From Hemiscyllium ocellatum (lineage: Eukaryota): 64,000 nt of DNA. The stretch covers positions 41,700,117-41,764,116 of the forward strand of contig NC_083410.1 in assembly GCF_020745735.1 (NCBI RefSeq). The letters are read 5' to 3'. The position numbers and the translations under genes are program-made. The notes beneath the pieces are model-generated. The model saw nothing but the letters and a program-made list of their open reading frames with translations, had not been told where the DNA came from and did not search any database. Shown piece after piece: positions 5,526-59,641 of the stretch (positions within the stretch are counted from its first letter, which is position 1; every line of letters starts with the position of its first letter).

Positions 5526-5828
5526 GTGGGAGCTTTGCTCTTTGTGTGTGCTCATAAAATTTTTCTTGTATAGTTCAAGACTTGGAGAATAATTTCTGAT
5601 GTTCCCAAAGTCGTCCTCCCTAACTTATGCACAGCAGCAGACATGGACACTAGCAATGCTTTTGTGATTGGTTCCTGGAATCTTGGCTAATAAAGTTGGT
5701 GATTTGGTCATGGGCTACAATTGCACTCTCAGTTGCCAAGCTTAAACTCTCAGCAAGCTTTCAAGTGATTCTCTCTAGGAAATGGAATAGTGATTAGTCT
5801 TTCATTTCTTGGGTTTAGTGTATTTGAG

Positions 5829-6032
5829 GAGAAAGTGAGGTCTGCAGATGCTGGAGATCAGAGCTGAAAATGTGTTGCTGGAAAAGCACAGCAGATCAGG
5901 CAGCATCCAAGCGGCAGGAGAATCTACGTTTCGGGCACGGGCCTGAAGAAGGGCTCATGCCCGAAACGTCGATTCCCCTGCTCCTTGGATGCTGCCTAAG
6001 CTGCTGCGCTTTTCCAGCAACATATTTTCAGC
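5829..6032 (-). mobile_element. fold-back Penelope-derived mini-element with hammerhead core (family A)
   Basis: roughly 80-bp inverted arms plus an asymmetric tail (GAGAAAGTGAGGTCTGCAGATGCTGGAGATC); CTGAAGA-A-GGGC-TCAT-GCCC-GAAACGTC at 5943-5970 (+); 15-bp TSD TTTAGTGTATTTGAG at 5814-5828 and 6033-6047. Confidence 0.85.
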
Positions 6033-7004
6033 TTTAGTGTATTTGAGTCGGATTGACTTTTGTGTTCCTGCAGAAAACATTGCAACCATGCAACTACATA
6101 TTAATCATCCTGGTCTCTGGTTCACTACTTTTGCTGTTTATTGATATCAATTTAGGATTTTGGTTCCTATTTGTTTTAACGTTATATTCTCAGTATGGCA
6201 TTCCTGTTTCTTTTTCTACCATTCTCAAAATATCAACTTTCTTACATTGTTTATAAGCATTGACTTTGATTTCTGGGTTTTGTCTTTTTCACTCTCGTCA
6301 GCTAAGTTTCTCCTTCGCCACCTTGCTTTTCATTCTCTCCGGTTTAATATTCTTTGTTTCAACCCTATAAATTCATTATCTCTGTCTTTAGAGACATCTG
6401 TGACAGTGAAAGGTAAGTCTTTTTAATTAAAATTCTGGTTTTCAGTTGAAGGTTCAATCATCCAATGGCGCTTCCAGTGGTTAAGAATTTTGAGAAACAC
6501 TGAGGCTATCTGCCTTTGTGAAAATCCAGGACTTGAAACTGGAGACTGTTAAAAGTTTCAAATACAACAATGAATCAAAAGTCAAACCCTGTTATTTCCT
6601 CCAATGTTTTTTGAATAACAGTGTATTTAATTGAGTGCTATTAATCAAGAAGTGATACAGCAAAACATTTTACCAAACTACTTTGAGCATTTTGGGTGCA
6701 AATAGATGCATATTGCAATGGCATTTTGTACAGTATTCTAACTCAGGGGTATAACATTTTTAAATATTTTACTGTGATTTGATTGACCGTTTAAAAAAAA
6801 TCAACTATTTCACTTGGAGTAGTGCTTCATTAAAAAGAGGCAAAATGGGAGTTTGTCAAAAGGGTGCACTGATTATCATGAGGGATTTTAACATATATAG
6901 ACTGGAAAAGTAGTCAAGATGATGAATTGATTCAGTGTTTTCACGAGAATTTCTGAAATGAGGATTTTTTCACACGAACCAGGAAGGAGGCTGTACTATT
7001 CTTT

Positions 7005-7217
7005 TGTTGTCCAATTATTTTTCTGTCTCTTTTGGGCTCTATCTCCACCTATTGTTTACATGTTAACCCCTCCCCCAACCATATCTTCTGCATAAAAAGC
7101 AACTTTTTCCTAGCTATCATCAGTTCTGAAGATGGGTCACCAGCCCCAAAACACTGACTCATTTCTCTTCACAGGTGCTGCCAGACTCAGAGTTTTTCGA
7201 GCAATTTCTGCTTTTGT
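7005..7217 (+). mobile_element. degenerate PLE 3' terminal repeat with decayed hammerhead, inserted in an old CR1
   Basis: cagttCTGAAGAtgggtcaccagccc.aaaac followed by the ...caggtgctgccagac... tail shared with the fold-back elements. Confidence 0.6.
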
Positions 7218-7389
7218 ATATTAGACCTGATTTTTGACCAAAATGAGATGAATTACTGACTTTTTATAGTGAAAGTGATCATAATATGATTGAATTTTAC
7301 ATGCACTTTAAGGGAGAGCACTGTGGATCCAACACCATTTTGAATTTAAATAAGAGGACATGAGATAGTTTTGACAAATAGGTTTAAGG

Positions 7390-8708
7390 AGAACCCAAAG
7401 GGATTTTATAAATACATTTAAAAACAAAAGGGTAGCTAGGGAGAGAATAAGGCCCCTCCAAAGAACAGCAAGGCAGCCTCTGTGTGGAGCCACAGGAGAT
7501 GGGGAGATCCTAAACAAGTATTTTTCATCAGTGTTTACTGTGGAGAAGGACATGGAAGATATAGAATGTAGCGAAATCGATGGTGACATCTTGAAAATCT
7601 CCAAATAGCAGAGGAGATAGTGCTGGATGTCTTAAAATGCATAAAGATAGATAAATCCCCAGGACCTGATCAGGTGTACCCAAGAACTCTGTGGGAAGCT
7701 AGAGAAGTGATTGCAAAGCCCCTTGCTGAGATATTTGCATCATCGATAGTCACAGATAGTGCCAGAGGACTGGAGGTTGGCTAATATGGTGCCACTATTT
7801 AGGAGGTGTAGTTTGTAAGTTTGCAGATGACACCAAAGTTGGAGGTGTAGTAGGCAGCGAAGAAAGTTAACTCCGAGTACAATGGGATCTTGATCAGATG
7901 GGCCAATGGGCTGAGAAGTGGCAGGTGGAGTTTAGTTTAGATAAATGTGAGGTGCTGCTTTTTGGAAAGGCAAATCAGAGCAGGACTTATACATCTAATG
8001 GGAAAGTCCTGGGGTGTGTTGCTGAACAAAGAGATCTTGGAGTGCAGTTTATAGTTCCTTGAAAGTGGAGTCACAGGTAGATAGGATAGTGAAGAAAGCA
8101 TTTGGTATGCTTTCCTTTATTGGTCTGAGCATTGAGTAGGGAGGTCATGTTGTGGCTGTACAGGACATTGGTTAGGCCACTTTTGGAATTTTCTGTGTAC
8201 TTCTGGTCTCACTCCTATGGGAAGGATGTTGTGAAACTTGAAAAGGTTCAGAAGAGATTTACAAGGATGTTGCCAGGATTAAAGGATTTAGGCTATAGGG
8301 AGAAGTTGAATAGGCTGGGGCTGTTCTCTCTGGAGCATCGGAGGCTGAGGGGTGACCTTTATAGAGAGGCATGGATAGGAGGAATAGATAAGGTCTTTTC
8401 CCTGGGAAGGGGGAGTCCAGAACTAGAGGGAAAAGGTTTAGGGTGAGAGAGGAAAAAATTTAAAAGGGACCGAAGGGGCAACTTTTTCACGCAATGTATG
8501 GTGCATGTATGGAATGACCTGCCAGAACAAGAGGTGGAGGCTAGTACAAATACAGCATTTAAAAGACGATGGGGATATGAAAGGAAGGGTTCAGAGGAAT
8601 ATGGACAAAGTGCTGGCAAATGCAACTAGATTAATTTAGGATATCTAGTTGGCGTTGATGAGTTGGACAGAAGGGTCTGTTTCTGTGCTCTGCATCTCTA
8701 TGACTCTA
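7390..8708 (+). mobile_element. CR1 (HER1-like) LINE, internally deleted 3' portion
   Basis: KSPGPD, KFADDTK, LYRTLVRPLLE, LEKVQKRFTRMLPG, RRLRGDL; CR1 3' tail ctctatgactcta. Confidence 0.88.
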
Positions 8709-11519: not shown

Positions 11520-12210
11520 GAACCCTAGCAAAACTAGAGTTAAAGGGAATTGGGGATCAGTATAATTTTTGCTGGTTGGAGTGATGTCTGGTACAAAGAA
11601 AGATGGTTGCTGTCAGTGGAAGTCAGTCATCTCAACTCCAGGATACCTCTGCAGGAGTTCCTCTGGGTGCTGTGCCCAGCCCAACCATCTTCAGCTGCTT
11701 CATGTCAGAAGTGGGGATGTTTACTAATGATTGCACTATTCATGACGACTTAGATACTGAAGCAGTCCATGTCTAAATGCAGCAAGACATGGACAATATA
11801 CAGGCTTGGACTGACATATAGCAAATAATATTTGTGCCAACTGGTGTCTGGCAATGTGTATCTCTACCAAGAGACAGACTAACCCTGACCCCTGGATATC
11901 TAATGGCATTATAATTGCTGAATACCCCACATCAAAATCCTGGGAGTTACTATTAATCAGACCCTGAACTGACCTAGCTATGTAAATACTACTTCCACAA
12001 GAAAAAGCCAGAAGCATGGAATCCTGCAGGAGGTAACTCATTGACTGACCGGCTCCCAGCGCATTCCCACCATCTGTGAGGCAAAAATCAGCAGTGTGAT
12101 GAATTCTCTCCATTTGACTGAATGACTGCACTATTAACAGCAGTCAAGAAGCTTGACACTGTCCAGGGCAAAGCAGCTTGCTTTACTGATACTATTACCT
12201 CAAGCATTCT
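11520..12210 (+). mobile_element. CR1-group LINE RT fragment (second family)
   Basis: decayed GVPQGSVLGP-like and ILGVTI motifs; same family at about 47990-50090 (+) and 61380-62520 (-). Confidence 0.62.
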
Positions 12211-12429
12211 TACATTCCACTGTTAATGCATGGTCGCAGCACTGTATAATTCAAGAGTTACCAGGAGAAAGCGGGAGAATGTGGTTGAGAAACTTATTAA
12301 TCATGATTCATGTCAAAACAGTCACACTTGGGTCTATTTCGTTGTTCATCTCCATTGTTCAGGATGGAGATATGTGTGGAGCTTCCTCCTCAGTAAATTG
12401 TTAAATTACCCATCGTCATTCATGACTAG

Positions 12430-13761: not shown

Positions 13762-14108
13762 GTAAGAAGAGTGTTTATTAATTTCACTGGAACACTAATG
13801 AATATATTGCTTGATTATCAGGTGTAAGGTTATTAAGAAAAAAAATTATAATCTATTAGACTATTCAAGTATTGTACATGAAACAGTCAGTGTAGGACAG
13901 TGACTTTTTAAAAAATTTCTAGTTGCAAGATAAAATAAATTGTTTCATGGCACATTGCACATCCCAGAAGCAACTCCTCGGCCAGTGTTCATGATGCGCA
14001 ATCCACCAATATTTAGCTTATTGTCCAGCAGAGTAAGTGAGTGGTCAGTCTCCTACCAATTCTCTATGATGGATACACTGTAACTAAACCTAAAGAGAAT
14101 GTAGAAGA

Positions 14109-14333
14109 CAACCAAAAAAGAGAAAATGCTGGAAAATCTCAGCAAGTCTTGCAACATCCGTAAGGAGAGAAAAGAGCTGATGTTTCAAGTCTAACAGCTT
14201 TGACAAAGGGTCAGTTAGACTCGAAATGTCAGCTCTTTTCTCTGCTTACAGATGCTGCAAGACTTGCTGAGATTTTCCAGCATTTTCTCTTTTTTGGTTT
14301 CAGATTCCAGCATCCACAGTAATTTGCTTTTAT
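14109..14333 (+). mobile_element. fold-back Penelope-type mini-element with variant hammerhead core (family B)
   Basis: roughly 86-bp inverted arms; TTGACAA-A-GGGTC-AGTTA-GACTC-GAAATGTC at 14200-14230; 15-bp TSD AGAGAATGTAGAAGA at 14094-14108 and 14334-14348. Confidence 0.85.
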
Positions 14334-14939
14334 AGAGAATGTAGAAGAGCCTGAGTTGCTATTATTGATTGCTTGAAAGATTGACCTTCCAGTTGAAGAG
14401 GGTGGCAGGGGTGGGGAAGCATGCGACTAAAGTCTGATGGATAGCTAGCCCATGGCTTTTTCAACCAGCTCTGATTCATTCTTTACTGTATGGTAGATGG
14501 TTCAGGTGCCTGCTAGCACAACCACTTTTTGTGCCTTTTGAGTTTGGGTCTTAATTTCATCCCTGCTGTCATAATATTGTCAGTGGGCATGTGTTTTTTT
14601 TCACAAGCTTTGAGAAGTGGGAAGCATATCACCTGTGTGCAGCAGGAGCAAACCCCTGCTGCCCACCTCCTAAGACACCAAGAAATGGCATGTCTTACTC
14701 CCAGCTTCCCAGTGATGATGAACAAACAACCATATTTCAAAGTCAGGGTGGTGTATGGCTTTTGAAAGTTTTAAGCAGTCATGGTGTTTCTGTTCATCAT
14801 CTGCTGTTGGCCCTTTTAGGTTGTACAGATTAACTTTGAAAAAGTTGGAAAGCTTGAATGACTTGCTGCATTGCATCTTATAAATGGTTTACACTGTAGT
14901 CACACATCTATGGTGGAAGGGAGACTAATCAAGAGTTGT

Positions 14940-15247: not shown

Positions 15248-15249
15248 GT

Positions 15250-25835: not shown

Positions 25836-25953
25836 AGCTCTGTATAACCCACAATTTGTCAAACTGCATGATCTTTGTTTTTGTTGCCATCTAGTGGACA
25901 TTTTCATTTAAATCAGTGATGTCTGAAATTTTACTGGTGTACTAATTAATAAT

Positions 25954-26182
25954 TGAAAATGCGTTGCTGGTTAAAGCACAGCAGGTCAGGCAGCATCCAA
26001 GGAATAGGAAATTCGACGTTTCGGGCATAAGCCCTTCATCAAGAAGCCCTTCCTGATGAAGGGCTTATGCCCGAAACGTCGAATTTCCTATTCCTTGGAT
26101 GCTGCCTGACCTGCTGTGCTTTAACCAGCAACGCATTTTCAACTGTGATCTCCAGCATCTGCAGACCTCATTTTTTACCTCT
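25954..26182 (+). mobile_element. fold-back Penelope-derived mini-element, perfect palindrome (family A)
   Basis: 89-bp perfect inverted repeat 25953-26041 / 26054-26142; 14-bp TSD TACTAATTAATAAT at 25940-25953 and 26183-26196. Confidence 0.9.
26050..26083 (+). ncRNA. minimal type I hammerhead ribozyme motif
   Basis: UUC-CUGAUGA-A-GGGC-UUAU-GCCC-GAA-ACGU-C-GAA; predicted cleavage after C26080; activity untested. Confidence 0.7.
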
Positions 26183-26375
26183 TACTAATTAATAATGTTG
26201 AGACTGAAATATTAGCAGTATACTTCATTGCCATGGGATAACAATACTAGTTGTATCTTTGGACTGTTGTTTAGATGTAAAGGATTTTATTTTTGTACAT
26301 CTCGGTCAAACGACAATATCCTGTTGCTCCAGTGAGTAGGTGCTTCTGAATTGCTGTAATGCCACTGACTGTCTT

Positions 26376-34645: not shown

Positions 34646-34909
<264 letters not shown>

Positions 34910-43702: not shown

Positions 43703-44147
43703 ACTCCGAAGTGTCCAATTTTAGGTGCAATTCTGTATTTAGACAGCACTTACTGAACAGTCTCAAGTATATCAACAATTACACTAAACTAATTTAAGGT
43801 CATCAGTTGGGCTGGCAATTACACTTGGTAGAAGCTACACAGATTCATATACATAGCTCTATTCTGTGTAAGAAGCAAAAAAATGTCCATACATTGCACC
43901 TTATTGTTTCCTGATACATTTCCCATGGCAGCACCTCAGCGAGGGTATAGTACATTCTTCCTGGTAATGCCTTGACCAAATGGAGTACACTTGCCAACCA
44001 CTCAACACGTTTTTCTCATGCATTGTAAACTGCCATTCTTTTTGAATGTTGGCATCCTTACACCTATTCTGATCATTGCAAAATGAAAAGCTTCAATAGT
44101 GGGGCTCCTCTCAGCAAAACTCAACTATTACACATTGAGAAGATTAC

Positions 44148-44338
44148 CTCCATCAATTCCAGCAACAAACTGGGCTCGATTATAATGGTTATATCGTATT
44201 CCAGTGCATTTTTGCCAGGTATAGAGCTCAAGAAGCTATCTCTTATTGCGCAAGCACCTTCAATAGCCTCCACAATGCCAGGCTTTCTCCACACAGAACT
44301 GGCCTTTATCCAGCCAGTTCGAAACACACTCTGAGGCT
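44148..44338 (-). CDS. IARS2: IARS2 coding exon
   Basis: tttcag|AG..GAG|gtaatc; [44 protein letters not shown]. Confidence 0.96.
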
Positions 44339-44431
44339 CTGAAAGAAAACAATTTAGATATGCATTCATTGTGCTTTGAGTCACAAATTTTAGAATACAA
44401 ATGCAAATAACAGCACTGAAAAAAATGCTAC

Positions 44432-44577
44432 CTTTTTGGTTTGATTGGTGTTGGAATACTTCTTCTGCAAGGTGAGGCAGGATTGGGGCTACAGAACGTG
44501 TGATTACATCTAATACTTCATCTAAAACTGTCTGACATGATAGACGCTTGGTGCTTTTCTCATCTTCACAATATAAT
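44432..44577 (-). CDS. IARS2: IARS2 coding exon (followed by a 93-nt intron)
   Basis: ttgcag|A..AAAG|gtagca; [43 protein letters not shown]. Confidence 0.95.
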
Positions 44578-45501
44578 CTGCAATTTTAATACAATAATGT
44601 TTAGGCAGACATAAACTCTAATATCTGCAGCAGAAAATAAAATGCCACATCAGCTCCATGGCTAACTCCTTAATGAAACAGCCTATGTCAACATATAATC
44701 AGCTCTAAAGAATGACAGGTAACAAAGCATGCTACATAAACATCAGACACCAAACAAAGACCAGACGTCTCTGACCTCTAACAGGATGACTGTCACACAG
44801 GTTGCCCCACTATTTTGGAGATCAGCAATGATTACAAATTAAACAAGGCCTGTCATGTCAGTACTATCACTATAACTGCAGGACCTATGCTGTTAATCTA
44901 ACAATGAGCTCATTCTTCCTAGTCCTTTAGAGCTTCTCCTTAGAAAGCTCAAGTCAAGAGTGATTAGAATATGCAGCATCATGTGGAAGATAGCAGTTTT
45001 CTTGACTGCTGCCTCAACATTGCTCTAAAATATCACTAGGGGGCACTGTGTTGCAATACACATGATCTATAAGATATACTATACTGCAGCAATTCGACAG
45101 CATGCCTCTTGTCTACAACCACTACCATCAAACAGGACAAGAGAAAATATTGTGTGAATGGCATCACCTCAAAGTCACACACCCTGACATGAATATACCT
45201 CATCACTCACCTATACTAAAGTACTGGAATTTCCCTACTTAACATTAAGTGAGCATTCCTGCACAAGGACTGTAGAGATTTAAAGGTATCACTGCCTTTT
45301 TAGAGCAACTGAAAGTCAGTAAATACCAACGTTGTGGTGTTGCCATATCTGAAAACTAATTTTGTGGCAATGTAAACTGATCCTGATCTGATCTACACAT
45401 ATAACCATTAGGCGGTTTAGAAGTCCATTTAAGTACTTAGTAAATGGCTTTTTGGTTTGCAAATGAAGTTTCAACATTGCCATTATGAATCTTATACTAA
45501 C

Positions 45502-47395: not shown

Positions 47396-47432
47396 CATTC
47401 ATAATTCATCTGCTGACAGTCTGACATTGTCA

Positions 47433-47690: not shown

Positions 47691-48557
47691 GTAAGGTAAC
47701 CACTGCACAGCCCCTACAGATAAAAAGTCCCATCTTTTCACAAAGTCTCTTCTGTCCTAACTATCACCATGCAAATGGAATTGATTCAGAACAGATTTAG
47801 ATTAAAACTAAGCATCCATGAGGCACTGTGGGCTATCAGGAGCAATACAATTACATTCAACTATAACCCATAACCTCCTGGCCCAGGCACATTCATTAAT
47901 CTAGCATTACCAGTGAGCAAGGGGAACAATCCTTGTTTAATGCAAAGTAAAGGACAGCACACCAAGATCAGCACTGTGCATACATAAACATTATGTACGA
48001 TCAAGTGTCCAACTTGGTGAAGCTACAATACATAACTATATGTATGTCAAACCCCATAACCCATGGATCTGATGGCTCTGCAATCCTGCTACATCCAGTA
48101 GTGAAGATGGTGGACAAATAAACTAACTGGATGAAGGATCAAACAACATCATCAAAAAAGGAAAAGCCCAGAATATCAGTGCAAAAGACAAGGTTGAAGC
48201 ACTTGCATCCATCTGGAGTCAAAATTCTCCAATATCGCAAATCTCAGTCTGCAGCCAATATGATTCTCTCCACCTGATATGAAGAATCGGATACTACAAA
48301 CACTGCTGGCCCTGGCAACATCGTAGCTGCAGGCAATATTATGAATGCTTGCACGCCAGAACCAGCCTCACTTCAAGCTGAGCTATTCTAGCACAGATAC
48401 AACACTGGCATCAATGTGGAAAAATGCCCTTGTGTCCTGTCCAGAAAAATTACAATAGTTCCAGTCCAACCAAGTTCTGGCATAAATCTATTCTAATTTG
48501 TCAGCAAAGTGGAGGAAATTGTTATCAATAGTATAAGTTACCATTATGCCACATGAG

Positions 48558-48686
48558 GAGTTGAGAGTCTGGTGCTGGAAAAGCACAGCAGGTCAGGCAG
48601 CATCTGAGGAGCAGGAGAATCGAAATTTCGGGCAAGAGCCCTTTATCAGGCATCCTGATGAAGGGCGTCTGATGCCGTTCATGCCT
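48558..48686. mobile_element. truncated family A fold-back mini-element
   Basis: one arm plus the palindrome centre (ccctttatcagg..cctgatgaaggg); 14-bp TSD TTATGCCACATGAG at 48544-48557 and 48687-48700. Confidence 0.8.
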
Positions 48687-48959
48687 TTATGCCACATGAG
48701 CCAGGAAATGGCAATCTCCAAAAAGAGAGTATAACCATTCTTCCCTTGGCATTCCCTGACATTACTACTGTTGAATTTCATACTATTAACATCCTAGCAG
48801 TAATCACTGACCAGATACCTAACTAGATCAGTCACTTAAATACTGTGGTTCTATATGCAAGTCAGAGATTGATCCCCAAATTCCTTCTACAGGACTTAAG
48901 TTAAGTGTGATCCAATATTCTACTTTTGCCTGGTTGATCACAGTTCCAATTATACTCAA

Positions 48960-49612
48960 GATCCTTATAAAGGAAGGCTGGATAGACTAGGACTTTTTTC
49001 ACTGGAGTGTAGAAGGTGATCTGATCGAAGTTTATAACATAATGAGAGGTATAGATAGAGTTATCGATAGTTCTCTTTTCCCTAGAATGGGGAATTTCAA
49101 GACTCGGGGGCACTTTTTTAAGGTGAAGAAGAAAGATTTAAAAAAGACATGGGGGCAAATTCTTTACACAGGGGGCAGTTCATTGTGGAATGAACTTACT
49201 GAGAAAGTGGTGGGTGTGGGTATAATCTTCTAGGAGAAAGTGAGGACTGCAGATGCTGGAGATCAGAGCTGAAAATGTGTTACTGGAAAAGCACAGCAGG
49301 TCAGGCAGCATCCAAAGAGCAGGAGAATCGACGTTTCAGGCATGAGCCATTCCTGAAGCAGGGCTCATGCCTGAAACGTCGATTCCCCTGCTCTTTGGAT
49401 GCTGCCTGACCTGCTGTGCTTTTCCAGCAACACATTTTCAAGTGTGGGTATAATTACAATGTTTAAAAGACTTTTGGATAGATACATGATTTGGTAAGGT
49501 TTGGAGAAATATGGGTTAGGAGCAGGCAGGTGACACTAGTTTAGTTTGGGATTATGTTCGGCATGGCCTGGTTGGACTGAAGGGTCTGTTTCAGTGCTGT
49601 ATGACTCAATGA
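48960..49612 (+). mobile_element. CR1 3' end interrupted by the fold-back element at 49227
   Basis: IMRGIDRV..LFPRMGNFKTRGH..WNEL; resumes after the TSD and ends gctgtatgactcaatgac. Confidence 0.8.
49227..49441 (-). mobile_element. family A fold-back mini-element nested in a CR1 fragment
   Basis: inverted arms plus tail; 13-bp TSD GTGTGGGTATAAT at 49214-49226 and 49442-49454. Confidence 0.87.
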
Positions 49613-49761
49613 CCAACCAAGGCAAAACGCAGCCCACTTGATTGGCATCCTATCCTCCAGCATCATTCAATGTGGCTGCAGCATGTACCATCTACAGGAT
49701 GCACTGCAATTGTTCACTATAGCGTATTCAACAACCTGTACTAAACATGCAATCTCTACAA

Positions 49762-49845
49762 GGAGAAAGTGAGGTCTGCAGATGCTGGAGATCAGAGCTG
49801 AAAATGTGTTGCTGGAAAAGCGTGTTGCTTTGACCTGCTGCACAG
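49762..49845 (-). mobile_element. tail-only family A insertion
   Basis: GGAGAAAGTGAGGTCTGCAGATGCTGGAGATCAGAGCTGAAAATG; 15-bp TSD ATGCAATCTCTACAA at 49747-49761 and 49846-49860. Confidence 0.82.
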
Positions 49846-50298
49846 ATGCAATCTCTACAACCTAGAAGGACAAGGGCAGTGGACACATGGGCTCATCACT
49901 ACCTCAATGTTGTCCTCCAGTTCACATACTACTGTAACTTGGAAGTTTGTGTGCAGTTTTTGCATCATCACAGAGTCAAAATATCAGAATTGTCTCTCTC
50001 ACTGCACTATAGGGAATTTTTCACCACTTGGACTGCGTCAGTTAAAGGAGGCAATCCACCATCACCTTCTAAACTGTTGATGAAAAATAATTTTAACCTT
50101 TGCTCACACACATATGGTGCGTACAAGCTTGATTTAACTCAGGTATTATTAACATGAAGATACCATTGAGCTTAATAATTGTGGTTATTTTAAACAAAAT
50201 GAATATATCCATTATTTTTTCTAATGGTTCATTGCTGTTTTTTTCCTGCTGTCAGTGGAAAGTTACTTACTTAAAACATTTAATAATAGTTCAGTTCT

Positions 50299-51966
50299 AG
50301 AATGCTCCCGCTGATGCTGCCAAGGCTAGCCCTACGTAAATTATATGGCTGGTTGGGCTCCTTTATTTGGAACCATAGACGGCCCCTTATTAAGCTGAAG
50401 CAGCTACAGCTTCCACAGGCAGGGGGAGGACTGGACTTCCCAGACTTTAGGAAATATCAGTTAAGCTCCCTACTAAGTTACATAGCTGATTGGGTTTCAT
50501 CTGATCCACAATCAATTTGGCTGGATATCGAAGCCTCCCAAGTAAAATACCCACTTATTAACCTTTTATTTTCAGATAAGGGGGAAATCATTACAGACCA
50601 CTGTAAAAATCCCATAATATTAAACACAATTAAGGCCTGGAATATAACGCGGCAAAATGAGGGTAACTCACATAAAACATCCCCCCATGCACCAATAGTA
50701 GGCGCATGGGGATTCCAACCGGGGATTACAGATGCCACCTTTAAACTCTGGAGATCCAGGGGCATCTCATGCTTAGGGGACCTATTTAAAGATGGGATCC
50801 TGATGTCCTTTGAGCAGCTGCGTCTGAAATTCGGAATACCTAATGGGGATCTCTTTCGATACTTCCAAGTTCGAGATTATATACAGAGGAAGACTACATT
50901 AATAGATAGTCTTTATAAATCAGACAGAGAACGTAATGTCTTACGACCAGCGGGGGCATCCTCCGTTAGTACTATATACCATTTGCTACATGATGGAGTC
51001 TCAGGAGACATGGATGACCTGCTTAAAACATGGGAGCAGGACTTGGGGCTAGAAATCTCTGAGGATATGTGGAATGACATTTGGGAAAATGCTAGAAGAA
51101 TTGCTATCTGTAACAGAACTCAGGCTATCCAACTAAAGATACTTCATAGGGCCCATATAGCTCCGGCTCGACTGGCAAAATTTAAGGCAGGAGCATCTCC
51201 AATGTGTCCCAAATGCAAAATAGAGGTGGGTACTCTTGTACATTGTCTGTGGACTTGTCAGAAAATCCGCAGATACTGGACTAAAGTGGCAAATACCCTG
51301 ACAGAAATTTCAGGAACGGAAATTAGGGTGGACCCTGTATCTCTCCTTTTGGGCTTTTCGAACCTCTCATCTCTGGATATGCATGGGAAGAGACTATTTT
51401 CTATTCTCTCTTTCTGTGCAAGGAAAAATATTTTGGTGAACTGGGTGGCTGAGGGCCCCCCTGGACTTTCAAATTGGCACAGATTAATTATGGAATATAT
51501 CCCCCTTGACTTCCTCACAAATATGGTGCACCGAAAGACTGAATTATTTTATAAAATATGGCAGCCCTTTTTGAATTATATAAATGCAGATATTTCGGCT
51601 ATCCTAACAAGGGCTTTTATTTAGTGAAGATTTCAGACCGGGCTGCTCCGGGGCCCCTTGGGAGAGGAATCCTGCGCGAATACGGGTTTTATTATATTTG
51701 ATGTTTATACATTCCAAGCATGTAAGAGACTTAGGTATACACTCTGGTTAGTTATAGGTTAGATTAGTAGAAAGTTGAGGTTTTTTTCTTTCTTTTTTCG
51801 TTTCTTTTTTTTTCTTTTTTTGTTTTCTTTCTTTCTCTTTTCTTTGTTAAATTATGACTATTGTATATATGATTTAATTGTACATCAATGTTTGTATTTG
51901 AGAGTTTTGTTTATTTTTGTAAATTTGCAAAAATGTTAAATTTCAATAAAAATATCTACAAAAAAA
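50299..51966 (+). mobile_element. young 5'-truncated L1-clade LINE, antisense within an IARS2 intron
   Basis: open ORF2 C-terminus; T-rich 3' UTR; AATAAA at 51945-51950; poly(A); 17-bp TSD AATAATAGTTCAGTTCT at 50282-50298 and 51967-51983. Confidence 0.92.
50302..51624 (+). pseudogene. L1 ORF2 C-terminal 440 codons (post-RT region + CCHC Zn knuckle); not a host gene
   Basis: FIWNHRRPLIKLKQLQLPQAGGGLDFPDF, W...GI..LGDL, LFRYFQVRDY and CPKC..EVGTLVHCLWTC motifs typical of fish-type L1 ORF2. Confidence 0.88.
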
Positions 51967-52501
51967 AATAATAGTTCAGTTCTGAAGGGTCATTGGACAC
52001 GAAACATTAACCCTGCTTTCTCTCCATAGATGTTGCCAGACCTGCTGAATTTCTTCAACAATTTATTCCATAATATGCACTGCTGTGCTTTAGGAACTCA
52101 TAACTTTGATGGTTTTGTAAATTGTGCCTTAAGAATGATAATAGATATTTCTGGTGTTTATTCCCCCTTCATTCTTTCATGTGATGTGGGAATTGTTGGC
52201 AGAGCCAGCACTTGTTGCGTTTCCCTAAATGCCTTCAAACTGATTGATTTGCGCAGTCATCTCAAACAGCAGTTAAAAGTCAGCCAACTACATTGCCTTG
52301 GGTCTGAGTCTGGAGTCACATGTAGGCCTGATAATTAGGTTGGTAGATTTTCTTCCCAACAAGACAATCATGAATTAAATAGGTATTTACACAATTTACG
52401 ACAATTGTCACGATTATTGAGACTGTATTAGAGATTTATAAATTGCATTCAAATTCCACCAGCTACCACAGGGGCCTTGAATTGATATCCCAAAAAATTA
52501 C

Positions 52502-52633: not shown

Positions 52634-53101
52634 CTGAAAACACAGAATAAATTATTAAGATAAAGAAGCAGCCTCCCTGGTTTGTCTTCACCAGACGGCA
52701 AGGTAGAGATGGTCTTTATCACAAACTTCTAAGAGAATACGTATGATTGAAGGATGACAGATTTATGGCTGTTCTAAATTAAGACATGTTGAACACTTCT
52801 GAATAAATCACTGCAAATATTAAAATAATGGCCATTATTAATAATTTTGTTTCTAGCTCATATCATAAATGAAACTCTTGACTTGTGCAATACACAAATT
52901 ATTTCAGTTTAATGCATCATTTTAATTTTATAATAGGCTAAATAGAACACCAAAGCTCTTAACTAATTTCCAGATACCTTGCTCTTCAAAATATTCGCAA
53001 AATTATGTTTTCAAAAATGTCTAACAAAACAGCTAAGATGCCTAATCATTGTTTGTGAAATGCTGTAACATATCCTAATGATGTAAAAGGAGCTATATAA
53101 A

Positions 53102-54781
53102 CGAGCGAGTTTTGAGAAGAGTTGTAGCTCAGGTTGAGGTTCTGGGTGTAGGTTTGCTTGCTGAGCTGGAAGGTTTGTTTTCAGACGTTTAGTCACCATG
53201 CTAGGTAACAAATTCAGTGAGTCTCCGAACGAAGCACTGGTGGTGTAGTCTACTTTCTATTTATATATTCGGGTTCCCTTGGGTTAGTGAGGTCATTTCC
53301 TGTGGTGACATTTCCTATGGTGGTGTCATTTCCTGTTCTTTTTCTCAGAAGGTGGTAAATGGGATCCAAGTCAATGTGTTTATTGATACAGTTTCAGTTG
53401 GAACGTCATGCTTCTAGGAATTCTCGTGCATGTCTCTGTTTGTCTTGTCCTAGGTTGGATGTGTCGTCCTAGTCGAACTGGTGTCCTTCCTCACCTGTAT
53501 GTAAGGATACAAGTGTCCTGGTGGCTAGTTTTCTGCCTGTTTGTCCAATGTAGGTCATGCAAGGTATTTTGTAGGTGACATTAGTTTTGTATGTTGTCTG
53601 TATAGGGTCCTTCAAGTTAATTAGCTGCTGTTTTAGTGTGTTGGTGAGTTTGTGGACTACCATGATGCAAAAGGGTCTGAGTAGTCTGGCAGTCATTTCC
53701 AAGATGTATTTGATGTCGGGGAGAGTGGCTAGGTTTTCTGGACGTGTTTGTCTGCTTGTTTGGGTTTGTTGCTCAGAAATCGGCAGACTGTGTTCATTGG
53801 GTACCCATTCTTTTTGAATACACTGTATAGGTGATTTTCCATTGCTCTGCGTAGTTCCTCCATGCTGCAGTGTGTGGTGGCTCGTTGAAATAATGTTCTG
53901 ATGCAACTTAGTTTGTGGATTTTGGGATGATTGCTTCTTTAGTTCAGTATTTGTTGTTTTCCTGTGGACGCTAGGTTAAACTTCTGCATTGGCTGATTGC
54001 TTTACTGTGACATCTAGCAATGGCAGTTTGTTGTTGTTTTCCTCCTCTTTAGTGAATTTTATGCAGTAAGCGTAGTATTGATGGTGTTGAAGGTTTCCTT
54101 TAATTTGTTTCATTTATTGATGACAATGGTGTCATCCACATAGCAGACCCAACGTTTGGATTGGATGATTGGCAAAGCTGTTTGTTCGAGTCTCTACATT
54201 ACTACCTCTGCAACGGCATGATAGTAGCCCGCAAACCCACCAACACACTAAAACAGCAGCTAATGAATTTGAAAGACCCTATACAGACAATAAGCAAAAC
54301 TAATGTCATCTACAAAATATCTTGCAAGAACTGTAACAAATACTACATTGGACAAACAAGCAGAAAACTAGCCACCAGGATCCATGAACATCAAGCAGCC
54401 ACAAAAAGACATGACCCAACCTCACTAGTATCCTTACATACACGTGAGGAAGTTCATTACTTCGACTGGGACAACATATCCATCCTAGGATAAGTCAAAT
54501 AGAGACATGCATGAGAATTCCTAGAATCATGACATTCCAACCAAAACTCTATCAACAAACACATTGACTTGGATCCCATTTACCTACCCACTGAGAAAAA
54601 GAACAGGAAATGACACCACCACAGGAAATGACATCAATCACCCAAGGAAACCCAAATATATAAACAGAAAGTGGCTACACCACCAGTGCTTCATTCAGAG
54701 GCTCACTGACGATGTTACCTAGTATGGTGACGAAATGTCTGAAAACAAACCTTCCAGCTTAGCGAGCAAACCTACATCCAG
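53102..54781 (-). mobile_element. Penelope-like element (Poseidon-type), 5'-truncated, with an inverted copy of its 3' part
   Basis: - strand RT motif WVCYVDDT near 54125-54151 and decayed GIY-YIG; + strand copy NVIYKISCKNCNKYYIGQTSRKLATRIHEH; flanking repeat CTATATAAA at 53093-53101 and 54784-54792. Confidence 0.88.
54703..54742 (+). ncRNA. minimal hammerhead ribozyme motif in the PLE terminal repeat (family D)
   Basis: UCA-CUGACGA-U-GUUACC-UAGUAU-GGUGAC-GAA-AUGU-C-UGA; a mutated mirror copy lies at about 53181-53221 (-). Confidence 0.7.
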
Positions 54782-55695
54782 GACTATATAAATGCTGGGG
54801 ACCATCTGAAGAAATGGATATTTTCATAACAAGCCCAGTGATTGATCCTTCCTGGTACTCTGTTTAAACATTTCTTTCATTGGAGGCTGTTGAGTAATTT
54901 CACTCTGTGACACTATAATGCCAAAGAGTGCCTCTCTTTGATAGTGCAACAGAATATGAAATGCAGAACACTAAATTTAGAATAGAACAGAATAGCAAAC
55001 ACCCATTCAACCTATGGTTTACAAAAATCAACTCAAACAGCAGACAGGTTTAGCATTTCCATGCAGTCCGTATTCCCGACAGTCTCATCCATTCAAGCAA
55101 TATTTGCTTAAATACAGCTGAAAAAGGGGCACATGTTGTTGCAACATTCTGTGTTGTACTCTTCAGAACATTTGCAAGAAAACCAATATAAGATGATGAC
55201 AACATTTTTATACCATATGAGAAAAATGTGTTGACTGTTTGTTGAATGAACTCTGATGGGCAGAAAATTGCATAGTAAGTTTTGTTTAAAATTTAAACGA
55301 GACAGGCGGACTCCAAATGTTAAAGTCATTACCTTGAGCAATAAACTGGAGAATGGCTGTTGCTTATTTTGTTACATTGTAATAGGCACAGTGTGCTTTA
55401 TCTGCAAAGAACCGCATCTCGTGTGTTAATATATGAAGCTTCCAGTATGTGCAGGTGCACCACACTATGTGCCCAACTCTCTGGTTGATGGCTTTTCACT
55501 GTCGTCCGTCACTGTTCCCTTTTACTACTAATCTAGTAGATTGTGGAAATGAAAATGTTCTCATCATCTCAAGGATCAAGGATAATGCAGGAAAGTGATG
55601 ATGAAGTGGAAGACCAACCACGATCCCTGTGAATAGCAGGGTGCTGAATGGAAAAGGGCTGTAAGGACTACTCTTGCTCCCATTTATGTTCTAAT

Positions 55696-55996
55696 ATTAG
55701 ATTAGATTAGATAACTGACAGTGTGGAAACAGGCCCTTTGGCCCAACAAGTCCACACCGACCCTCTGAAGAGTAACCCATCCAGACCCATTTCCCTCTGA
55801 CTAACGCACCTAACACTATGGGAAATTTAGCATAGCCAATTCACCTGACCTGCCCATGTTTTGGACTATGGGAGGAAACCCGAGCAGACACAGGGAGAAT
55901 GTGCAAACTCCACGAACACAGTCGCCCGAGGCTGGAACAGAACCTGGGACCCTGGTGCTGTGAGACAATAGTGCTAACCGCTGAGCCACTGTGCCG
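55696..55996 (-). mobile_element. HE1-type SINE
   Basis: (TTAGA)n tail, full body. Confidence 0.85.
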
Positions 55997-56199
55997 TTCG
56001 TATTATTATGACAAACTGTCTGATTTTTCTCTTATTTGCCATCAAATAAAAGTTTTGCCAATGAGGTATATTTTTTTTAAATTCAGATGCCTGGGGAAGC
56101 AGTTATAGCTCAATGTTAAGGTTAACGATAATTTAATGGAATCAGCTAATGCAGTACAAATGGTTGTGATAAAACCACAAATTGATCTCAGGACAGAAG

Positions 56200-58200
56200 T
56201 TCAGCATGTGGGCAATGAATGGCCTTGGATGGCCATAGTTGTAATTTGAGCTGCTCCTCCTGTTCCACTATGGGACAAGTGTTCACAAGATCCTTGGCCC
56301 ATCTTCAAATGGATGGCTGTTATCCAGATTTTCTGTGGAAATTTTAAATCTGACATTTTATCACCCAGATCGATGGTGTTTGCAGTTGACTAGGTGTGTC
56401 ATAGAGAGGTGACTCTGTCTTCAGTTTGCAGGGTGTGAAACATGTTCAGTTGAGAGCACAGGATTTGAGATGGGTGCATAGGATTTTCATCAAGGTTTTG
56501 TGCTTTGTTAGCTATCAGTCAAAGGTATTTTTTGAGGAGAATGTTTTCCTGGGAATGTCAGGTGATTCACCGAGTGTAAGTCATTGTAACTGCACTGGTC
56601 TCGATGTCCCAAAAATAATTCTTTCTGGAAGTGGAAATGTATCATATTTATCTGCCAGCTTCTGAGCCCATTGAGCAACAGTACTCTATTGTTGGGTAGA
56701 CAAGTGTAAGTGAAACAATATTAAGCATGTTGTCTTTGTCTCAGGTAGAACTTGCCAGTTTCACATGAGATTCACTCTCATCCTGACCTTGGCTCTAGTG
56801 TATTGAAGGTTTTCATGGTAGGTCAATGAATAGTCAGAGAGTGACACTAAGCAATTTTGGCATTTGGGGGACAAGTGCTCAACTATAGAACTGGCTTCCT
56901 TGGTTTTTGAGTTGGTCAGGTGGAAGATTGACATTACAGTCTTGGCCTGATTTAATTAAGTCTTGTCTTTTTCTGAAGTGGGCTTCCAGAGACTCTAGAT
57001 CTTCAGTGAGAATTTCCTCAGTATTCTGTTGAGCATAGCTTGGAAAACAAGGGTGAGTTGCTGGGACATGCAAAAAGCTGTAACTTTGTTGGACAACAGT
57101 CACTAGTTATATATAAAGAAGTCGTTTGAGGAATGATCAGAGTCTGTTGTTGGCAGCTGAACCTGTCTGCAAGGTACACATGGAATTATTTGGTTTCTGA
57201 TCATGGAGTTGTTTGGTTATCAGGTTTTCAGACTGCAAATAAATTGGAGAGTTTCAGCAGCCTGCCTTTTTCCACACAGTGTCACAGCTCAGGCTCAGGC
57301 TAAGTCGAAAAAACCATTTCCTGTCTTAAGGCCTTTCTGAAAACCAGCCTCAATTGAGAAGGGTTAGGACTAGCTCAGAGCAATTGCAGCCAGTGCGAAA
57401 ATCTGCTTCTGCCTGGAGACCTTACTGCTTCCAGGATGGGACTCAAACTGTTTCACAGGAGGAACTCCATGTCCTTTTATGTTATTGACAGCAGACCATG
57501 GGCAGCAGTGCTTGGTTACTGAGTGGCTTCCCACTTGGCAACGGTCACTACCTTGGACTGGCACCAGATAGTTGGAATGGTACTTGTGCTTTGAATGGCG
57601 GTAAGCTTTGCCAGCCAATACTGTCCCTGTGATTCAGTGTGCTTCAGGAATTCTGGGCAAATCCCATCAATTTCTGCTTTTGTGCCTGACTTACATGTTG
57701 TCAAGATACAGTATATTTCCTCATGTGTAGGGTTACCAGAAGACTGTCTGCTCTCAGGAAGACTTGCAAGACTGCATCAGCACTATTTTTACTGTCTGCT
57801 GACTGACACCTCTGGTTTATTAGAAACTGGGAAACAATAGTATGAGCAATGACTCAGGATTGCTGGTATGGTTGTTGTTCAGCTACTTCCAGGTGGCCTA
57901 GAAGTTCCCACCCCTTTTGATACTGCCAGCTGTCAGAGCTCAGTTAGTCTTCAACTGAATTGGCTGCCAGACCCAGAGATACACAACAGCAACTTTGGTG
58001 ATGATTGAATTATTCAACCTCTACTGCCACCTACAGGATGTGTCATGGCCTCCTGCCTATCATCTATCCACACAATGCAGCCTGGATTAAAAATAAAACC
58101 TGCATCCTAATGCTGCATTGCACTGTCAATGCTTTGATGTGAAGGACCACTCTGCAAATTCATCAGATTTCCTGTGCACTGCCTCATCAACATGGTACAT
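56200..58200 (-). mobile_element. degenerate non-LTR retrotransposon, Ingi/Vingi-like
   Basis: frameshifted motifs GTKAEIDGICPEFLK, IPTIWCQSKVV, DTVWK..LLKL, QGS, EEILTEDLESLEAHF. Confidence 0.5.
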
Positions 58201-58395
58201 CGCTCAACCTAAACTAAGCCTGACACACTGCATTTCAATTGAATAGAAAGGCTTCTATATAAATTCAAGTTACAAAAATAATAATAAAACACCTGTCATT
58301 GAAGGAGTTATGTACATCTTACTGCCAACAGGAAAGTGTACTTAGTATTAGCAAAACAAGAAGAACTTCAGAGTTCATCTTTTCTTAGTTCTAAC

Positions 58396-58521
58396 CTTAA
58401 AAATGTCATCTCTTGCTGCTTGCAGTATATTTTTGCCAATTAAAATCTCTGTGAAAACATTCGACTCTGCTGCCCACCAGCGAAGAACATCTGCCCCATA
58501 GGGCGGGTCTTGGTTTGGATC
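58396..58521 (-). CDS. IARS2: IARS2 coding exon
   Basis: gtatag|GAT..AAG|gttaga; [42 protein letters not shown]. Confidence 0.96.
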
Positions 58522-59537
58522 CTATACAACATAAGCAACTGTAGTTAATATCTTACAGCATAAATAAAAACATAGGAAATGTAGAATTTTGTTGATTATG
58601 TGCACATAATCTTAATGCACAATTTGTATGAACTTGATTTCCAGATGAAAAGAAATTTCTCTCTCATGTTAATGCACTAAACAAAAATTTAAGGTCACTG
58701 AGGCCAAACAAATGCACATTAATTAACTAATTTTGCATTCACTTATAAGGAGCTTCAAGAATTAAGAACCTTCTTTACTTGCAATTACAAGACAAAAAGC
58801 ATTGATGAATATCATTTTCAACCTTCAAGTGAACATGTGTTGAATATTATCCAAATAGGATAATTAAATAATTTAATTTTGAATAATTGTCAGTATTTCA
58901 AGAATATGTAGAAAGTATGCCGAATGAAGTTGAAAAGTACAGTTTTATCTTTTAATATCCTTGTCACACGATTAAGAGCCAAGATTGGTATTAACTTGTG
59001 GTGCATGCATTTAACATGTTTATACGAAGACTGATCAATATTTCATTTAAAAAAATAATTTCCTACTTCTTACCACACAGAGAAGCTATTGTCTCACTTT
59101 GCAATAAATCCCAGCATTCATCTAATCAATTAATATAGCATCATATTCATGGTGAACATTAGCAATCTGCTATGTGCTGCTACAGAATCCAAGCCGCTGG
59201 AAAGTTTAAACGAGCAACTTTGCCTATCCTCAATCTTCCTGGAATCCTCATAGTCATACTTAGTCACACGGACAATGTCAAAAAAAGAAACTGTGAACCG
59301 CTCCTCTAGTATTCAATTCACGTTCAACTATATGGTGAATGGAGTGGACCTGACAATACAAACTCAGCACCAGTAAACATGTTTGCAAAACCCACAAATG
59401 AAGTGGCAATGGTAAAGGCTATAAAAATCTGAATTTGTTCAAGAAGTGACTGCAGTAGGTACAGTAGAATGACCACAGGTTTGCAGAAACAAATATGAAG
59501 CTCTTCATAAGAGATGGTTATAAGAAAAGAATATTCA

Positions 59538-59641
59538 CCAGTTCTGCAGAAGGGTCACTGTACTCGAAATATTAATTCTGCTTTCTCTCACAAAACAATG
59601 CCAGACCTGCTGAGTTTCTCCAGCAATTCCTGTTTTTGTTC
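59538..59641 (+). mobile_element. degenerate PLE-type terminal fragment with decayed hammerhead
   Basis: AGTT-CTGCAGA-A-GGGT-CACTGT-ACTC-GAA-ATAT-T-AATT plus tail; similar relics at about 2690-2772, 35300-35408 and 51977-52065. Confidence 0.6.

What the first reader, a model, noticed from the sequence alone, without database searches (positions are those of the whole stretch)
5814..59641. Family of tiny fold-back mobile elements centred on hammerhead-ribozyme cores, with 13-15 bp TSDs
Seen: six insertions (5829, 14109, 25954, 48558, 49227, 49762) of 85-230 bp, each bounded by an exact 13-15 bp TSD. The complete ones consist of an 80-90 bp inverted repeat plus a one-sided tail, and the palindrome centre carries CUGANGA-(extra nt)-stem II-GAA-ACGU-C. 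Further decayed relics are present. Known: Penelope-like elements carry minimal type I hammerheads with a palindromic, near-absent helix III and cleave as dimers. Inference: these are ORF-less, ribozyme-bearing minimal PLE derivatives mobilised by PLE RT and GIY-YIG, not DNA-type MITEs, because the TSDs are long and variable and the tail is asymmetric. About ten copies or relics in 64 kb imply a very large genome-wide population. I cannot tell from here whether repeat databases already describe them.
Basis: partly seen in the sequence, partly recalled or inferred. Interest (0 to 1): 0.82.

Follow-up and report, generated by a model that had tools for sequence, protein, structure and literature searches.

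The report
Penelope retrotransposon hammerhead stub insertions
The six small palindromic insertions are real, but they are the usual scars left by Penelope-like retrotransposons in a shark genome: short end-pieces carrying a stripped-down hammerhead ribozyme, often inserted as mirror-image pairs, which is a kind of element already described.

Summary
Observation confirmed. All six insertions lie at the stated coordinates, each flanked by an exact 13-15 bp target-site duplication (random placements never exceed 11 bp). A profile search finds ten loci in the 64 kb.

The centres carry the minimal hammerhead typical of Penelope-like elements (PLEs): CUGANGA, an unpaired base before helix II, GAA, self-complementary ACGU, then C. 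One copy has the known U3-A8 covariant core.

Interpretation partly supported. PLE reverse transcriptase/endonuclease made these, not a DNA transposase. But the fold-back is probably not the mobile unit.
- The unit is one ~100-nt arm with fixed ends. It also occurs as single-arm copies.
- A 1.7-kb PLE fragment in the same window, encoding GIY-YIG endonuclease, has the same layout: head-to-head arms, a 39-nt tail on one arm, a 9-bp target-site duplication.
- Inverted copy plus a one-sided 30-40 bp tail is a published PLE hallmark. It is explained by priming on both DNA strands from two RT start sites.

As a fold-back RNA the ribozyme is locked in a hairpin, and no arm begins at the cleavage site.

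I could not identify the autonomous parent of these families. This scan has flagged the same thing repeatedly elsewhere in this genome. New member of a known kind.

The parts
5829..6032 (.). Head-to-head double stub, family A. Tail 5829-5862 (34 nt). Antisense arm to ~5942. Sense arm 5939-6032 with an intact minimal hammerhead at 5943-5970 (+). TSD 5814-5828 / 6033-6047 (15 bp).
14109..14333 (.). Head-to-head double stub, family B. Antisense arm 14109-~14195. Sense arm 14192-14297 with the U3-A8 covariant hammerhead at 14200-14230 (+) and a 4-bp helix I. Tail 14298-14333 (36 nt). TSD 14094-14108 / 14334-14348 (15 bp).
25954..26182 (.). Youngest head-to-head double stub, family A2. The arms have 0 differences in the 80 compared positions. 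Hammerhead 26053-26080 (+) is intact. The mirror copy at 26011-26046 (-) has U3 with G8. Tail 26142-26182 (41 nt). TSD 25940-25953 / 26183-26196 (14 bp).
48558..48686 (-). Single full arm, sense on the minus strand (48561-48654), with no tail and a decayed core (A8, AUUU). At its 5' junction there are ~32 nt extra: a 12-nt snap-back plus 20 nt of unknown origin. TSD 48544-48557 / 48687-48700 (14 bp).
49227..49441 (.). Head-to-head double stub, family A, inserted into another repeat. Tail 49227-49267 (41 nt). Sense arm 49345-49441. The hammerhead at 49349-49384 has A9 changed to C. TSD 49214-49226 / 49442-49454 (13 bp).
49762..49845 (.). Aberrant 84-bp insertion: a 34-nt tail, the last 25 nt of an arm (antisense), then 24 nt resembling an internal arm segment in sense. 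No hammerhead. TSD 49747-49761 / 49846-49860 (15 bp).
2684..2769 (.). Old relic: the 3' half of an antisense arm, followed by a short sense-arm fragment.
7120..7216 (+). Old single-arm stub (family C, related to B). It starts CAGUU|CUGA, 5 nt upstream of C3. The core is decayed.
51977..52067 (+). Old single-arm stub (family C) with the same 5' start, lying just after the poly(A) of a LINE.
59538..59638 (+). Old single-arm stub (family C) with the same 5' start.
53102..54783 (.). Comparison piece: a 1.7-kb head-to-head pair of 5'-truncated PLE copies of another family. The 39-nt tail (53102-53140) is on the left arm only. Both arms encode the GIY-YIG motif. Hammerhead at 54706-54739 (+), with a decayed mirror copy at 53180-53221 (-). 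A TATATAAA box (54657-54664) lies 49 nt upstream of C3. TSD CTATATAAA (9 bp).
62540..62606 (-). 67-bp micro-stub of the same family as 53102-54783: the tail plus the last ~28 nt of the unit.
63190..64000 (+). 5'-truncated, GC-rich PLE ORF fragment (RT C-terminal region and GIY-YIG) with one frameshift. It is cut by the window end, so its 3' end is not visible.

Best explanation
These are dead-on-arrival 'stub' insertions made by the reverse transcriptase/GIY-YIG endonuclease of Penelope-like elements (PLEs) in a shark genome.

The copied unit is a discrete ~100-nt RNA segment. It begins 4-5 nt upstream of a minimal hammerhead motif. It ends at the site where PLE RT initiates, or 34-41 nt further on at a second initiation site, which gives the 'tail'.

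The endonuclease makes nicks staggered by 13-15 bp, which gives the TSD. When both DNA ends prime reverse transcription, two cDNAs grow toward each other and are joined head-to-head. The product is a fold-back whose centre is the 5' end of the unit, that is, the hammerhead. When only one end primes, a single-arm stub results. So the fold-back is made anew at each insertion and is not the thing that propagates.

Shown here: the TSDs, the fixed unit ends, a single tail, the coexistence of single and double copies, the same layout in a coding PLE fragment, and the hammerhead motif features.

Inferred: priming on both strands and two RT start sites, taken from in-vitro work on an Anolis PLE. [quoted passage not shown] RT starting at the promoter-proximal copy of its site would then run off after ~100 nt.
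For: (1) Exact 13-15 bp TSDs at all six copies, against a null maximum of 11 bp.

(2) The profile search finds 15 arms at 10 loci. Nine arms start within a 3-nt window (profile positions 3-5, which is 4-5 nt upstream of C3). Thirteen end at positions 101-103. Four loci are single arms.

(3) Exactly one tail of 34-41 nt is present in 5 of 5 complete head-to-head inserts. If each end took a tail independently, this would happen with probability at most 0.5^5.

(4) In the same window, 53102-54783 is a head-to-head pair of PLE fragments encoding GIY-YIG (Pfam; aligned to a 946-aa RT+GIY-YIG protein). It has a 39-nt tail on one arm, a TSD and its own minimal hammerhead.

(5) In 5829 and 49227 each arm holds a part the other lacks: the tail on one, the CUGANGA box on the other. 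Neither arm can have been copied from the other.

(6) Both arms of a copy share private variants, with 0, 2 and 10 differences in 80 nt. Only one arm-specific variant is shared between copies.

(7) Literature. An inverted 5'-truncated copy plus a 30-40 bp tail at one end is a PLE hallmark (PMC8557442; PMC3846280). A purified PLE protein cleaves and extends both strands, and the tail equals the sequence between two internal RT start sites (PMC11167929). Dispersed single minimal hammerheads, and pairs on opposite strands, are described in PMC4209133.
Against: - The autonomous PLE that supplies the family A/B/C unit was not found. No copy in the window extends upstream of the hammerhead, so the link to a coding PLE rests on architecture and on a different family.
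- 5829 and 49227 share the same asymmetric centre and one arm-specific base. That would also fit descent from a fold-back master.
- Only four complete fold-backs were available.
- Priming on both strands is known from one Anolis element in vitro, not from sharks.
- The TATA-box and transcription-start argument comes from another family and is a sequence motif only.
Confidence: 0.7

Rival explanations
1. One reading: the fold-back itself is a heritable, ORF-less non-autonomous element. It is transcribed as a whole and copied as a whole by PLE RT, so it forms a true family of tiny fold-back mobile elements.
For: 5829 and 49227 share the same asymmetric centre: the tail arm starts inside helix II and the other arm includes the box. 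They also share one arm-specific base, C against T. Any read-through transcript of a fold-back carries a sense arm with an RT site at its 3' side.
Against: - The same unit occurs as single arms at four loci.
- A coding PLE fragment shows the same layout.
- Family B shows a similar short-arm asymmetry independently, but with the tail on the other arm. That points to a recurrent mechanism rather than descent.
- The divergences fit a star phylogeny with arms identical at insertion. Counts over the 80 compared positions: 5829 against 49227 arms differ at 6-9 sites. Half the 10-site gap between 5829's arms plus half the 2-site gap between 49227's arms predicts about 6.
- The fold-back RNA is a hairpin of -139 to -192 kcal/mol, which is a poor RT template.
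Confidence: 0.12
2. The templates come from a dedicated ORF-less master lineage: a SINE-like or monomeric retrozyme-like ~100-135-nt RNA with its own promoter that parasitises PLE RT. They are not the leader of autonomous PLE transcripts. Fold-backs still arise at insertion.
For: None of about ten loci extends upstream of the hammerhead. The 5' end is sharp. Several diverged subfamilies (A1, A2, A3, B, C) keep the same unit boundaries and a conserved 3' block. Non-autonomous PLE derivatives are known: non-LTR retrozymes (bioRxiv 10.64898/2026.07.22.740005) and non-autonomous Chlamys elements.
Against: No internal promoter was recognised. No tandem arrangement is present. Stubs without an upstream promoter should be inert. 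A transcription start just upstream of the hammerhead, plus internal RT initiation, explains the same boundaries without a separate lineage.
Confidence: 0.25
3. There is one priming event only. The first cDNA snaps back on itself at the palindromic helix II and copies itself, giving the inverted arm (the self-priming model discussed for rotifer PLEs).
For: Palindromes at inverted junctions were taken as signs of self-priming in PMC3846280. 14109, 25954 and the 1.7-kb insertion have one arm that contains everything the other has. The arms of 25954 are identical.
Against: In 5829 and 49227 the tail is on one arm and the CUGANGA box only on the other. Neither arm can be a copy of the other. The arm without a tail always ends at the same fixed position, as expected for a second RT start site.
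Confidence: 0.1
4. DNA-type MITEs moved by a transposase that recognises the terminal inverted repeats.
For: The whole element is an inverted repeat with TSDs.
Against: TSDs of 13, 14 and 15 bp vary within one family. The ends are asymmetric because of the one-sided tail. Single-arm copies have the same outer end. The content is shared with a retroelement hallmark, the hammerhead in the PLE end.
Confidence: 0.02

Closest known systems
Penelope-like element insertions with inverted pseudo-LTR and one-sided 'tail' (Arkhipova et al. 2013, PMC3846280; Craig et al. 2021, PMC8557442; Frangieh et al. 2024, PMC11167929)
   Same: Head-to-head inverted copies, a 30-40 bp extension on one end only, TSDs, and a hammerhead in the repeated end. 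The window itself holds a coding example with the same layout.
   Different: The arms here are only ~85-100 nt, so nothing but the hammerhead-to-RT-start segment is present. The TSDs are 13-15 bp, against 8-10 bp in the rotifer examples. The 5' ends are fixed rather than randomly truncated.
Minimal hammerhead motifs of metazoan PLEs (Cervera & de la Pena 2014, PMC4209133; Lunse et al. 2017, cited in PMC6765202)
   Same: CUGANGA, one unpaired base, helix II with G10.1-C11.1, GAA, self-complementary 15.2-16.2 with no helix III loop, a short helix I, and the U3-A8 covariant core. The motifs are dispersed as thousands of single copies and as pairs on opposite strands.
   Different: I found no description of shark families. 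Helix II is 4-5 bp here, against 7-8 bp in the schistosome examples. Activity is untested.
Animal non-LTR retrozymes (bioRxiv 10.64898/2026.07.22.740005)
   Same: ORF-less, carry a type I hammerhead, and are related to PLE pseudo-LTRs.
   Different: Retrozymes are head-to-tail tandem arrays that can release circular RNA. These are single or mirror-image copies with no tandem unit, and no arm starts at the cleavage site.
Schistosome Sm-alpha / Sj-alpha hammerhead SINE-like elements
   Same: Short, abundant, ORF-less retroposons that carry a hammerhead.
   Different: Those have a canonical hammerhead with helix III and a pol III promoter. Neither was seen here.

Membership tests
PLE-type minimal hammerhead (min-HHR) | Conserved core: C3-U-G-A-N-G8-A, G12-A-A, A15.1...U16.1, H17 (or the U3-A8 covariant) | tested here: met
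   Intact in 5829, 25954 (+) and 14109 (U3-A8). Single-base defects in 49227 (A9C), 25954 (-) (U3 with G8) and 48558. 4 hits against 0.01 expected in shuffles.
PLE-type minimal hammerhead (min-HHR) | [quoted passage not shown] | tested here: met
   Present in every copy of families A and B and in the coding PLE fragment. Named as a hallmark in PMC4209133.
PLE-type minimal hammerhead (min-HHR) | No helix III loop; self-complementary 15.1-16.1 tetranucleotide that allows a dimer | tested here: met
   ACGU in family A and in one arm of the coding fragment. AUGU, consistent with CpG decay of ACGU, in family B and the other arm of the coding fragment. AUUU in 48558.
PLE-type minimal hammerhead (min-HHR) | Helix II kept by compensatory change between families | tested here: met
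   GGGC/GCCC, GGGUC/GACUC and GUUACC/GGUGAC are all fully paired.
PLE-type minimal hammerhead (min-HHR) | Short helix I (4-5 bp) | tested here: inconclusive
   4 bp in family B. Only 3 bp in 25954 and the coding fragment. Fewer in 5829, where the upstream strand is the other arm.
PLE-type minimal hammerhead (min-HHR) | Self-cleavage as a dimer | not testable with these tools
   Needs a cleavage assay. In a fold-back RNA the open ribozyme fold costs +22 to +44 kcal/mol relative to the hairpin.
Rfam hammerhead families (types I, II, III, HH9, HH10) | Match to a curated covariance model | tested here: not met
   No hammerhead hit at gathering score, or at E<=10 on 261-nt stretches. Only microRNA-hairpin models matched. 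These models include helix III.
Penelope-like element insertion | TSD of variable length | tested here: met
   13, 14, 14, 15, 15, 15 bp, and 9 bp for the coding fragment.
Penelope-like element insertion | 30-40 bp tail on one end only | tested here: met
   34, 41, 41, 36 and 39 nt, on one arm in 5 of 5 complete inserts.
Penelope-like element insertion | Adjacent inverted 5'-truncated copy (head-to-head) | tested here: met
Penelope-like element insertion | Sequence continuity with an RT + GIY-YIG element of the same family | not testable with these tools
   No A/B/C copy in the window reaches coding sequence. Shark genome DNA was not retrievable. Two PLE ORF fragments of other families lie in the window.
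Penelope-like element insertion | AT-rich target | tested here: inconclusive
   TSDs are 72% A+T against 61.5% for the window, from seven sites only.
Non-LTR retrozyme | Head-to-tail tandem units, each with a hammerhead | tested here: not met
   The profile hits are single or inverted pairs, never adjacent on one strand.
DNA-transposon MITE | TSD of fixed length and symmetric termini | tested here: not met
   TSD length varies from 13 to 15 bp. The tail is one-sided. Single-arm copies exist.

The most novel reading that the evidence does not exclude
The ~100-nt unit (hammerhead plus RT entry site) may be a self-sustaining ORF-less parasite of shark PLEs, not a by-product. Its hammerhead would serve mainly to pair two template RNAs through the self-complementary ACGU helix III. 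A dimeric RT/endonuclease would then copy one RNA from each DNA end. That would explain why both arms of a fold-back always come from the same subfamily and why exactly one arm carries the tail.
Probability: 0.12. Interest if true: 0.6.

Novelty: new member of a known kind. Interest (0 to 1): 0.25.

Why it matters
These copies add shark families to the known class of PLE hammerhead stubs. They are also a clean natural record of how PLEs integrate:
- nicks staggered by 13-15 bp;
- two alternative RT start sites about 35-40 nt apart, with exactly one of each used per double insertion;
- templates that were not ribozyme-cleaved.

That agrees with the in-vitro picture from one lizard element and extends it to an old vertebrate lineage.

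In practice, repeat annotators should file these as PLE fragments and not as MITEs or microRNA hairpins. The young perfect hairpins inside introns could be sources of double-stranded RNA.

Tried and rejected
- **Rfam at gathering and at E<=10:** no hammerhead family matched, only hairpin-shaped microRNA models. I take those hits to reflect the palindrome alone.
- **A reading frame from the AUG in loop II**, as in the Anolis element, where the ORF starts in stem II. The frame is open through the arms, but a stop falls in the tail in most family A copies. I dropped the idea.
- **Fetching the autonomous parent.** A GIY-YIG piece found only one unrelated protein. A search of protein representatives found thousands of PLE proteins (RT + GIY-YIG confirmed by Pfam on one full-length hit). 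The encoding chromosomes gave no DNA ('file too large') or no record.
- **A metagenome scan with a 22-nt arm motif:** five microbial contigs matched, but only over the short block around that motif (about 24-35 nt, not a full unit). These are chance hits.
- **A look-up of the scan's notes by sequence:** blank.
- **Lunse et al. 2017:** not held in the library.

Full report
**What is there.** The window is vertebrate DNA. Earlier notes of this scan call it shark, and it holds an exon-like ORF with a tRNA-ligase anticodon-binding domain match. At each of the six stated positions there is an insertion bounded by an exact direct repeat of 13-15 bp:

| Element | TSD (bp) |
|---|---|
| 5829-6032 | 15 |
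| 14109-14333 | 15 |
| 25954-26182 | 14 |
| 48558-48686 | 14 |
| 49227-49441 | 13 |
| 49762-49845 | 15 |

In 3000 random placements with the same tolerance, the longest flanking repeat was 11 bp. Four insertions are complete fold-backs. Their arm-to-arm identity is 83.7-97.8%, and each has a 34-41 nt tail on one side only. The other two are partial.

**The hammerhead motif.** No Rfam hammerhead model matches, even at E<=10 on short stretches. Only microRNA-hairpin models score, because of the palindrome. I therefore wrote a strict descriptor. It required:
- C3-G8 or U3-A8;
- 0 or 1 base after A9;
- a perfectly paired helix II of 4-8 bp closed by G10.1-C11.1;
- GAAA-NN-U-H.

It gives 4 hits in the window against 0.01 in Markov shuffles. 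Three lie in the fold-backs, at 5943-5970, 14200-14230 and 26053-26080. The fourth, at 54706-54739, lies just downstream of a GIY-YIG ORF.

All four have one unpaired base between A9 and helix II. All have a self-complementary or CpG-decayed ACGU in place of helix III, and a helix I of only 3-4 bp. Cervera and de la Pena list exactly these features for the minimal hammerheads of Penelope-like elements, including the U3-A8 covariant core seen at 14200 (PMC4209133).

Helix II is entirely different in sequence in the three families, yet always paired: GGGC/GCCC, GGGUC/GACUC, GUUACC/GGUGAC. In an alignment of families A, B and C, two things are conserved: the hammerhead core, and a 3' block of the form GAUGCUGCC.GACCUGCUG..UUU.UCCAGCA. 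The spacer between them is not conserved.

**The unit is one arm, not the fold-back.** A profile built from the arms finds 15 arms at ten loci.
- Four loci are complete mirror-image pairs.
- One is a decayed partial pair (2684-2769).
- Four are single arms: 7120-7216, 48561-48654, 51977-52067 and 59538-59638.
- One is a fragment.

Nine arms begin within a 3-nt window, 4-5 nt upstream of C3. The three old single copies all start CAGUU|CUGA, with unrelated DNA upstream. Thirteen arms end at the same position, and some of them have the tail added. So there is a discrete unit of about 100 nt, or about 135 nt with the tail. No arm starts at the base after C17, so the DNA record shows no ribozyme-cleaved template.

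**A coding Penelope fragment in the window has the same architecture.** The region 53102-54783 is a head-to-head pair of 5'-truncated copies.
- Both arms encode the GIY-YIG motif (Pfam).
- Both align to residues 849-878 of a 946-aa RT+GIY-YIG protein.
- The right arm ends about 45 nt after its hammerhead.
- The left arm carries 39 extra bases at its outer end.
- The whole insertion is flanked by CTATATAAA.

A 67-bp micro-stub of the same family lies at 62540-62606. A second PLE ORF fragment runs off the window end at 63190-64000. So the layout of fold-back, one tail and TSD is how PLEs of this genome insert, at any length.

**What the literature says.**
- PLE insertions are often accompanied by an adjacent inverted 5'-truncated copy, with a 30-40 bp tail at only one end (PMC8557442; PMC3846280).
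- A purified Anolis PLE protein cleaves and extends both DNA strands. It starts reverse transcription at two adjacent internal sites, and the tail is the sequence between them.
- In that system hammerhead mutants do not affect insertion, and no RNA ends were seen at the cleavage site (PMC11167929).
- Dispersed single minimal hammerheads, and pairs on opposite strands 100-700 bp apart, were reported in 2014 and ascribed to truncated PLEs.
- ORF-less PLE derivatives are known as non-LTR retrozymes, but those are tandem arrays.

**Fold-back made at insertion, or inherited?** I compared 80 shared positions between arms.
- The arms of 25954 are identical. Those of 49227 differ at 2 sites and those of 5829 at 10.
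- Both arms of a copy share that copy's private variants.
- Only one arm-specific base is shared between two copies.
- The arm-to-arm counts between 5829 and 49227 (6-9 differences) sit at or just above the roughly 6 predicted if each copy's arms were identical at insertion. That prediction is half of 10 plus half of 2.
- In 5829 and 49227 the tail is on one arm and the CUGANGA box only on the other. Neither arm can be a copy of the other. This argues against simple snap-back and for two separately made cDNAs.
- Exactly one tail in 5 of 5 complete inserts shows the two initiations are coordinated.

One point goes the other way. 5829 and 49227 share the same asymmetric centre, which would also fit a common fold-back ancestor. 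But family B shows a similar asymmetry independently, with the tail on the opposite arm. With four complete copies this is not decisive. I put formation at insertion at about 0.7 and a heritable fold-back at about 0.12.

**Can the ribozyme work here?** As a whole-element transcript, each fold-back is a hairpin of -139 to -192 kcal/mol. Forcing the hammerhead core open costs 22-44 kcal/mol. The motif is complete in only three of the six reported copies. A single arm could in principle pair with another through ACGU, as proposed for PLE hammerheads. That needs an assay.

**Where the fixed 5' end may come from (inference).** In the coding fragment, a TATATAAA box lies 49 nt upstream of C3 in both arms. 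That would place a transcription start 13-19 nt upstream of the hammerhead. PLE transcripts may begin just upstream of the hammerhead, and the RT entry site lies about 60-100 nt further on. RT starting at that promoter-proximal site would then run off after about 100 nt. This would give abundant stubs with fixed ends. It is untested.

**What could not be done.** I could not find the autonomous parent of families A/B/C. Shark chromosomes were not retrievable, and a metagenome scan gave chance matches only.

**Relation to earlier notes of this scan.** The same phenomenon has been noted many times elsewhere in this genome. Follow-ups reached similar conclusions: stubs from PLE ends, fixed starts, head-to-head doubles with one tail. 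I treated these as leads and re-derived each point from this window.

**Verdict.** The link to Penelope is right. The idea of a distinct family of fold-back mobile elements is not supported, and the kind of element is already described. It is a new (shark) member of a known kind, with modest added value as a natural record of the PLE integration mechanism.

Noticed in passing
window 53102-54783: A 1.7-kb head-to-head pair of 5'-truncated Penelope-like copies with GIY-YIG coding sequence in both arms. There is a 39-nt tail on the left arm only and a 9-bp TSD. A TATATAAA box lies 49 nt upstream of the hammerhead in both arms, which may be the pseudo-LTR promoter.
   Followed up: partly
window 62540-62606: A 67-bp micro-stub of the same PLE family as 53102-54783. 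It consists only of the tail plus the last ~28 nt of the unit.
   Followed up: partly
window 63190-64000: A GC-rich, young-looking PLE ORF fragment (RT C-terminal region, Cys-rich linker, GIY-YIG) with one frameshift near a poly-C run at about 63640. It is cut off by the window end. The closest protein representatives are 64-82% identical.
   Followed up: partly
window 50290-51960: A 444-codon open frame with a weak zf-RVT match, ending in a poly(A) run. It is probably the 3' part of a LINE. A single-arm PLE stub sits directly after its poly(A).
   Followed up: no
window 49000-49600: The fold-back at 49227 interrupts another interspersed repeat, which continues on both sides of the insertion.
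   Followed up: no
window 44124-44585 (-): An ORF with a clear match to the anticodon-binding domain of class I tRNA ligases.
   Followed up: no
window 26011-26084: The young palindrome scores 52-54 bits (E about 1e-9, below the gathering score) against the Rfam plant microRNA model MIR6136. That model's consensus also contains GACG-GUUUCGG ... CCGAAAC-GUCG. This is probably just hairpin shape, but the shared string is odd.
   Followed up: no
window 5829-5862, 26142-26182, 49227-49267: In both orientations the tail folds into a small stem-loop (GGUCU-GCAGAUGCUGG-AGAUC). This recalls the stem-loop at the RT start site reported for the Anolis element.
   Followed up: no
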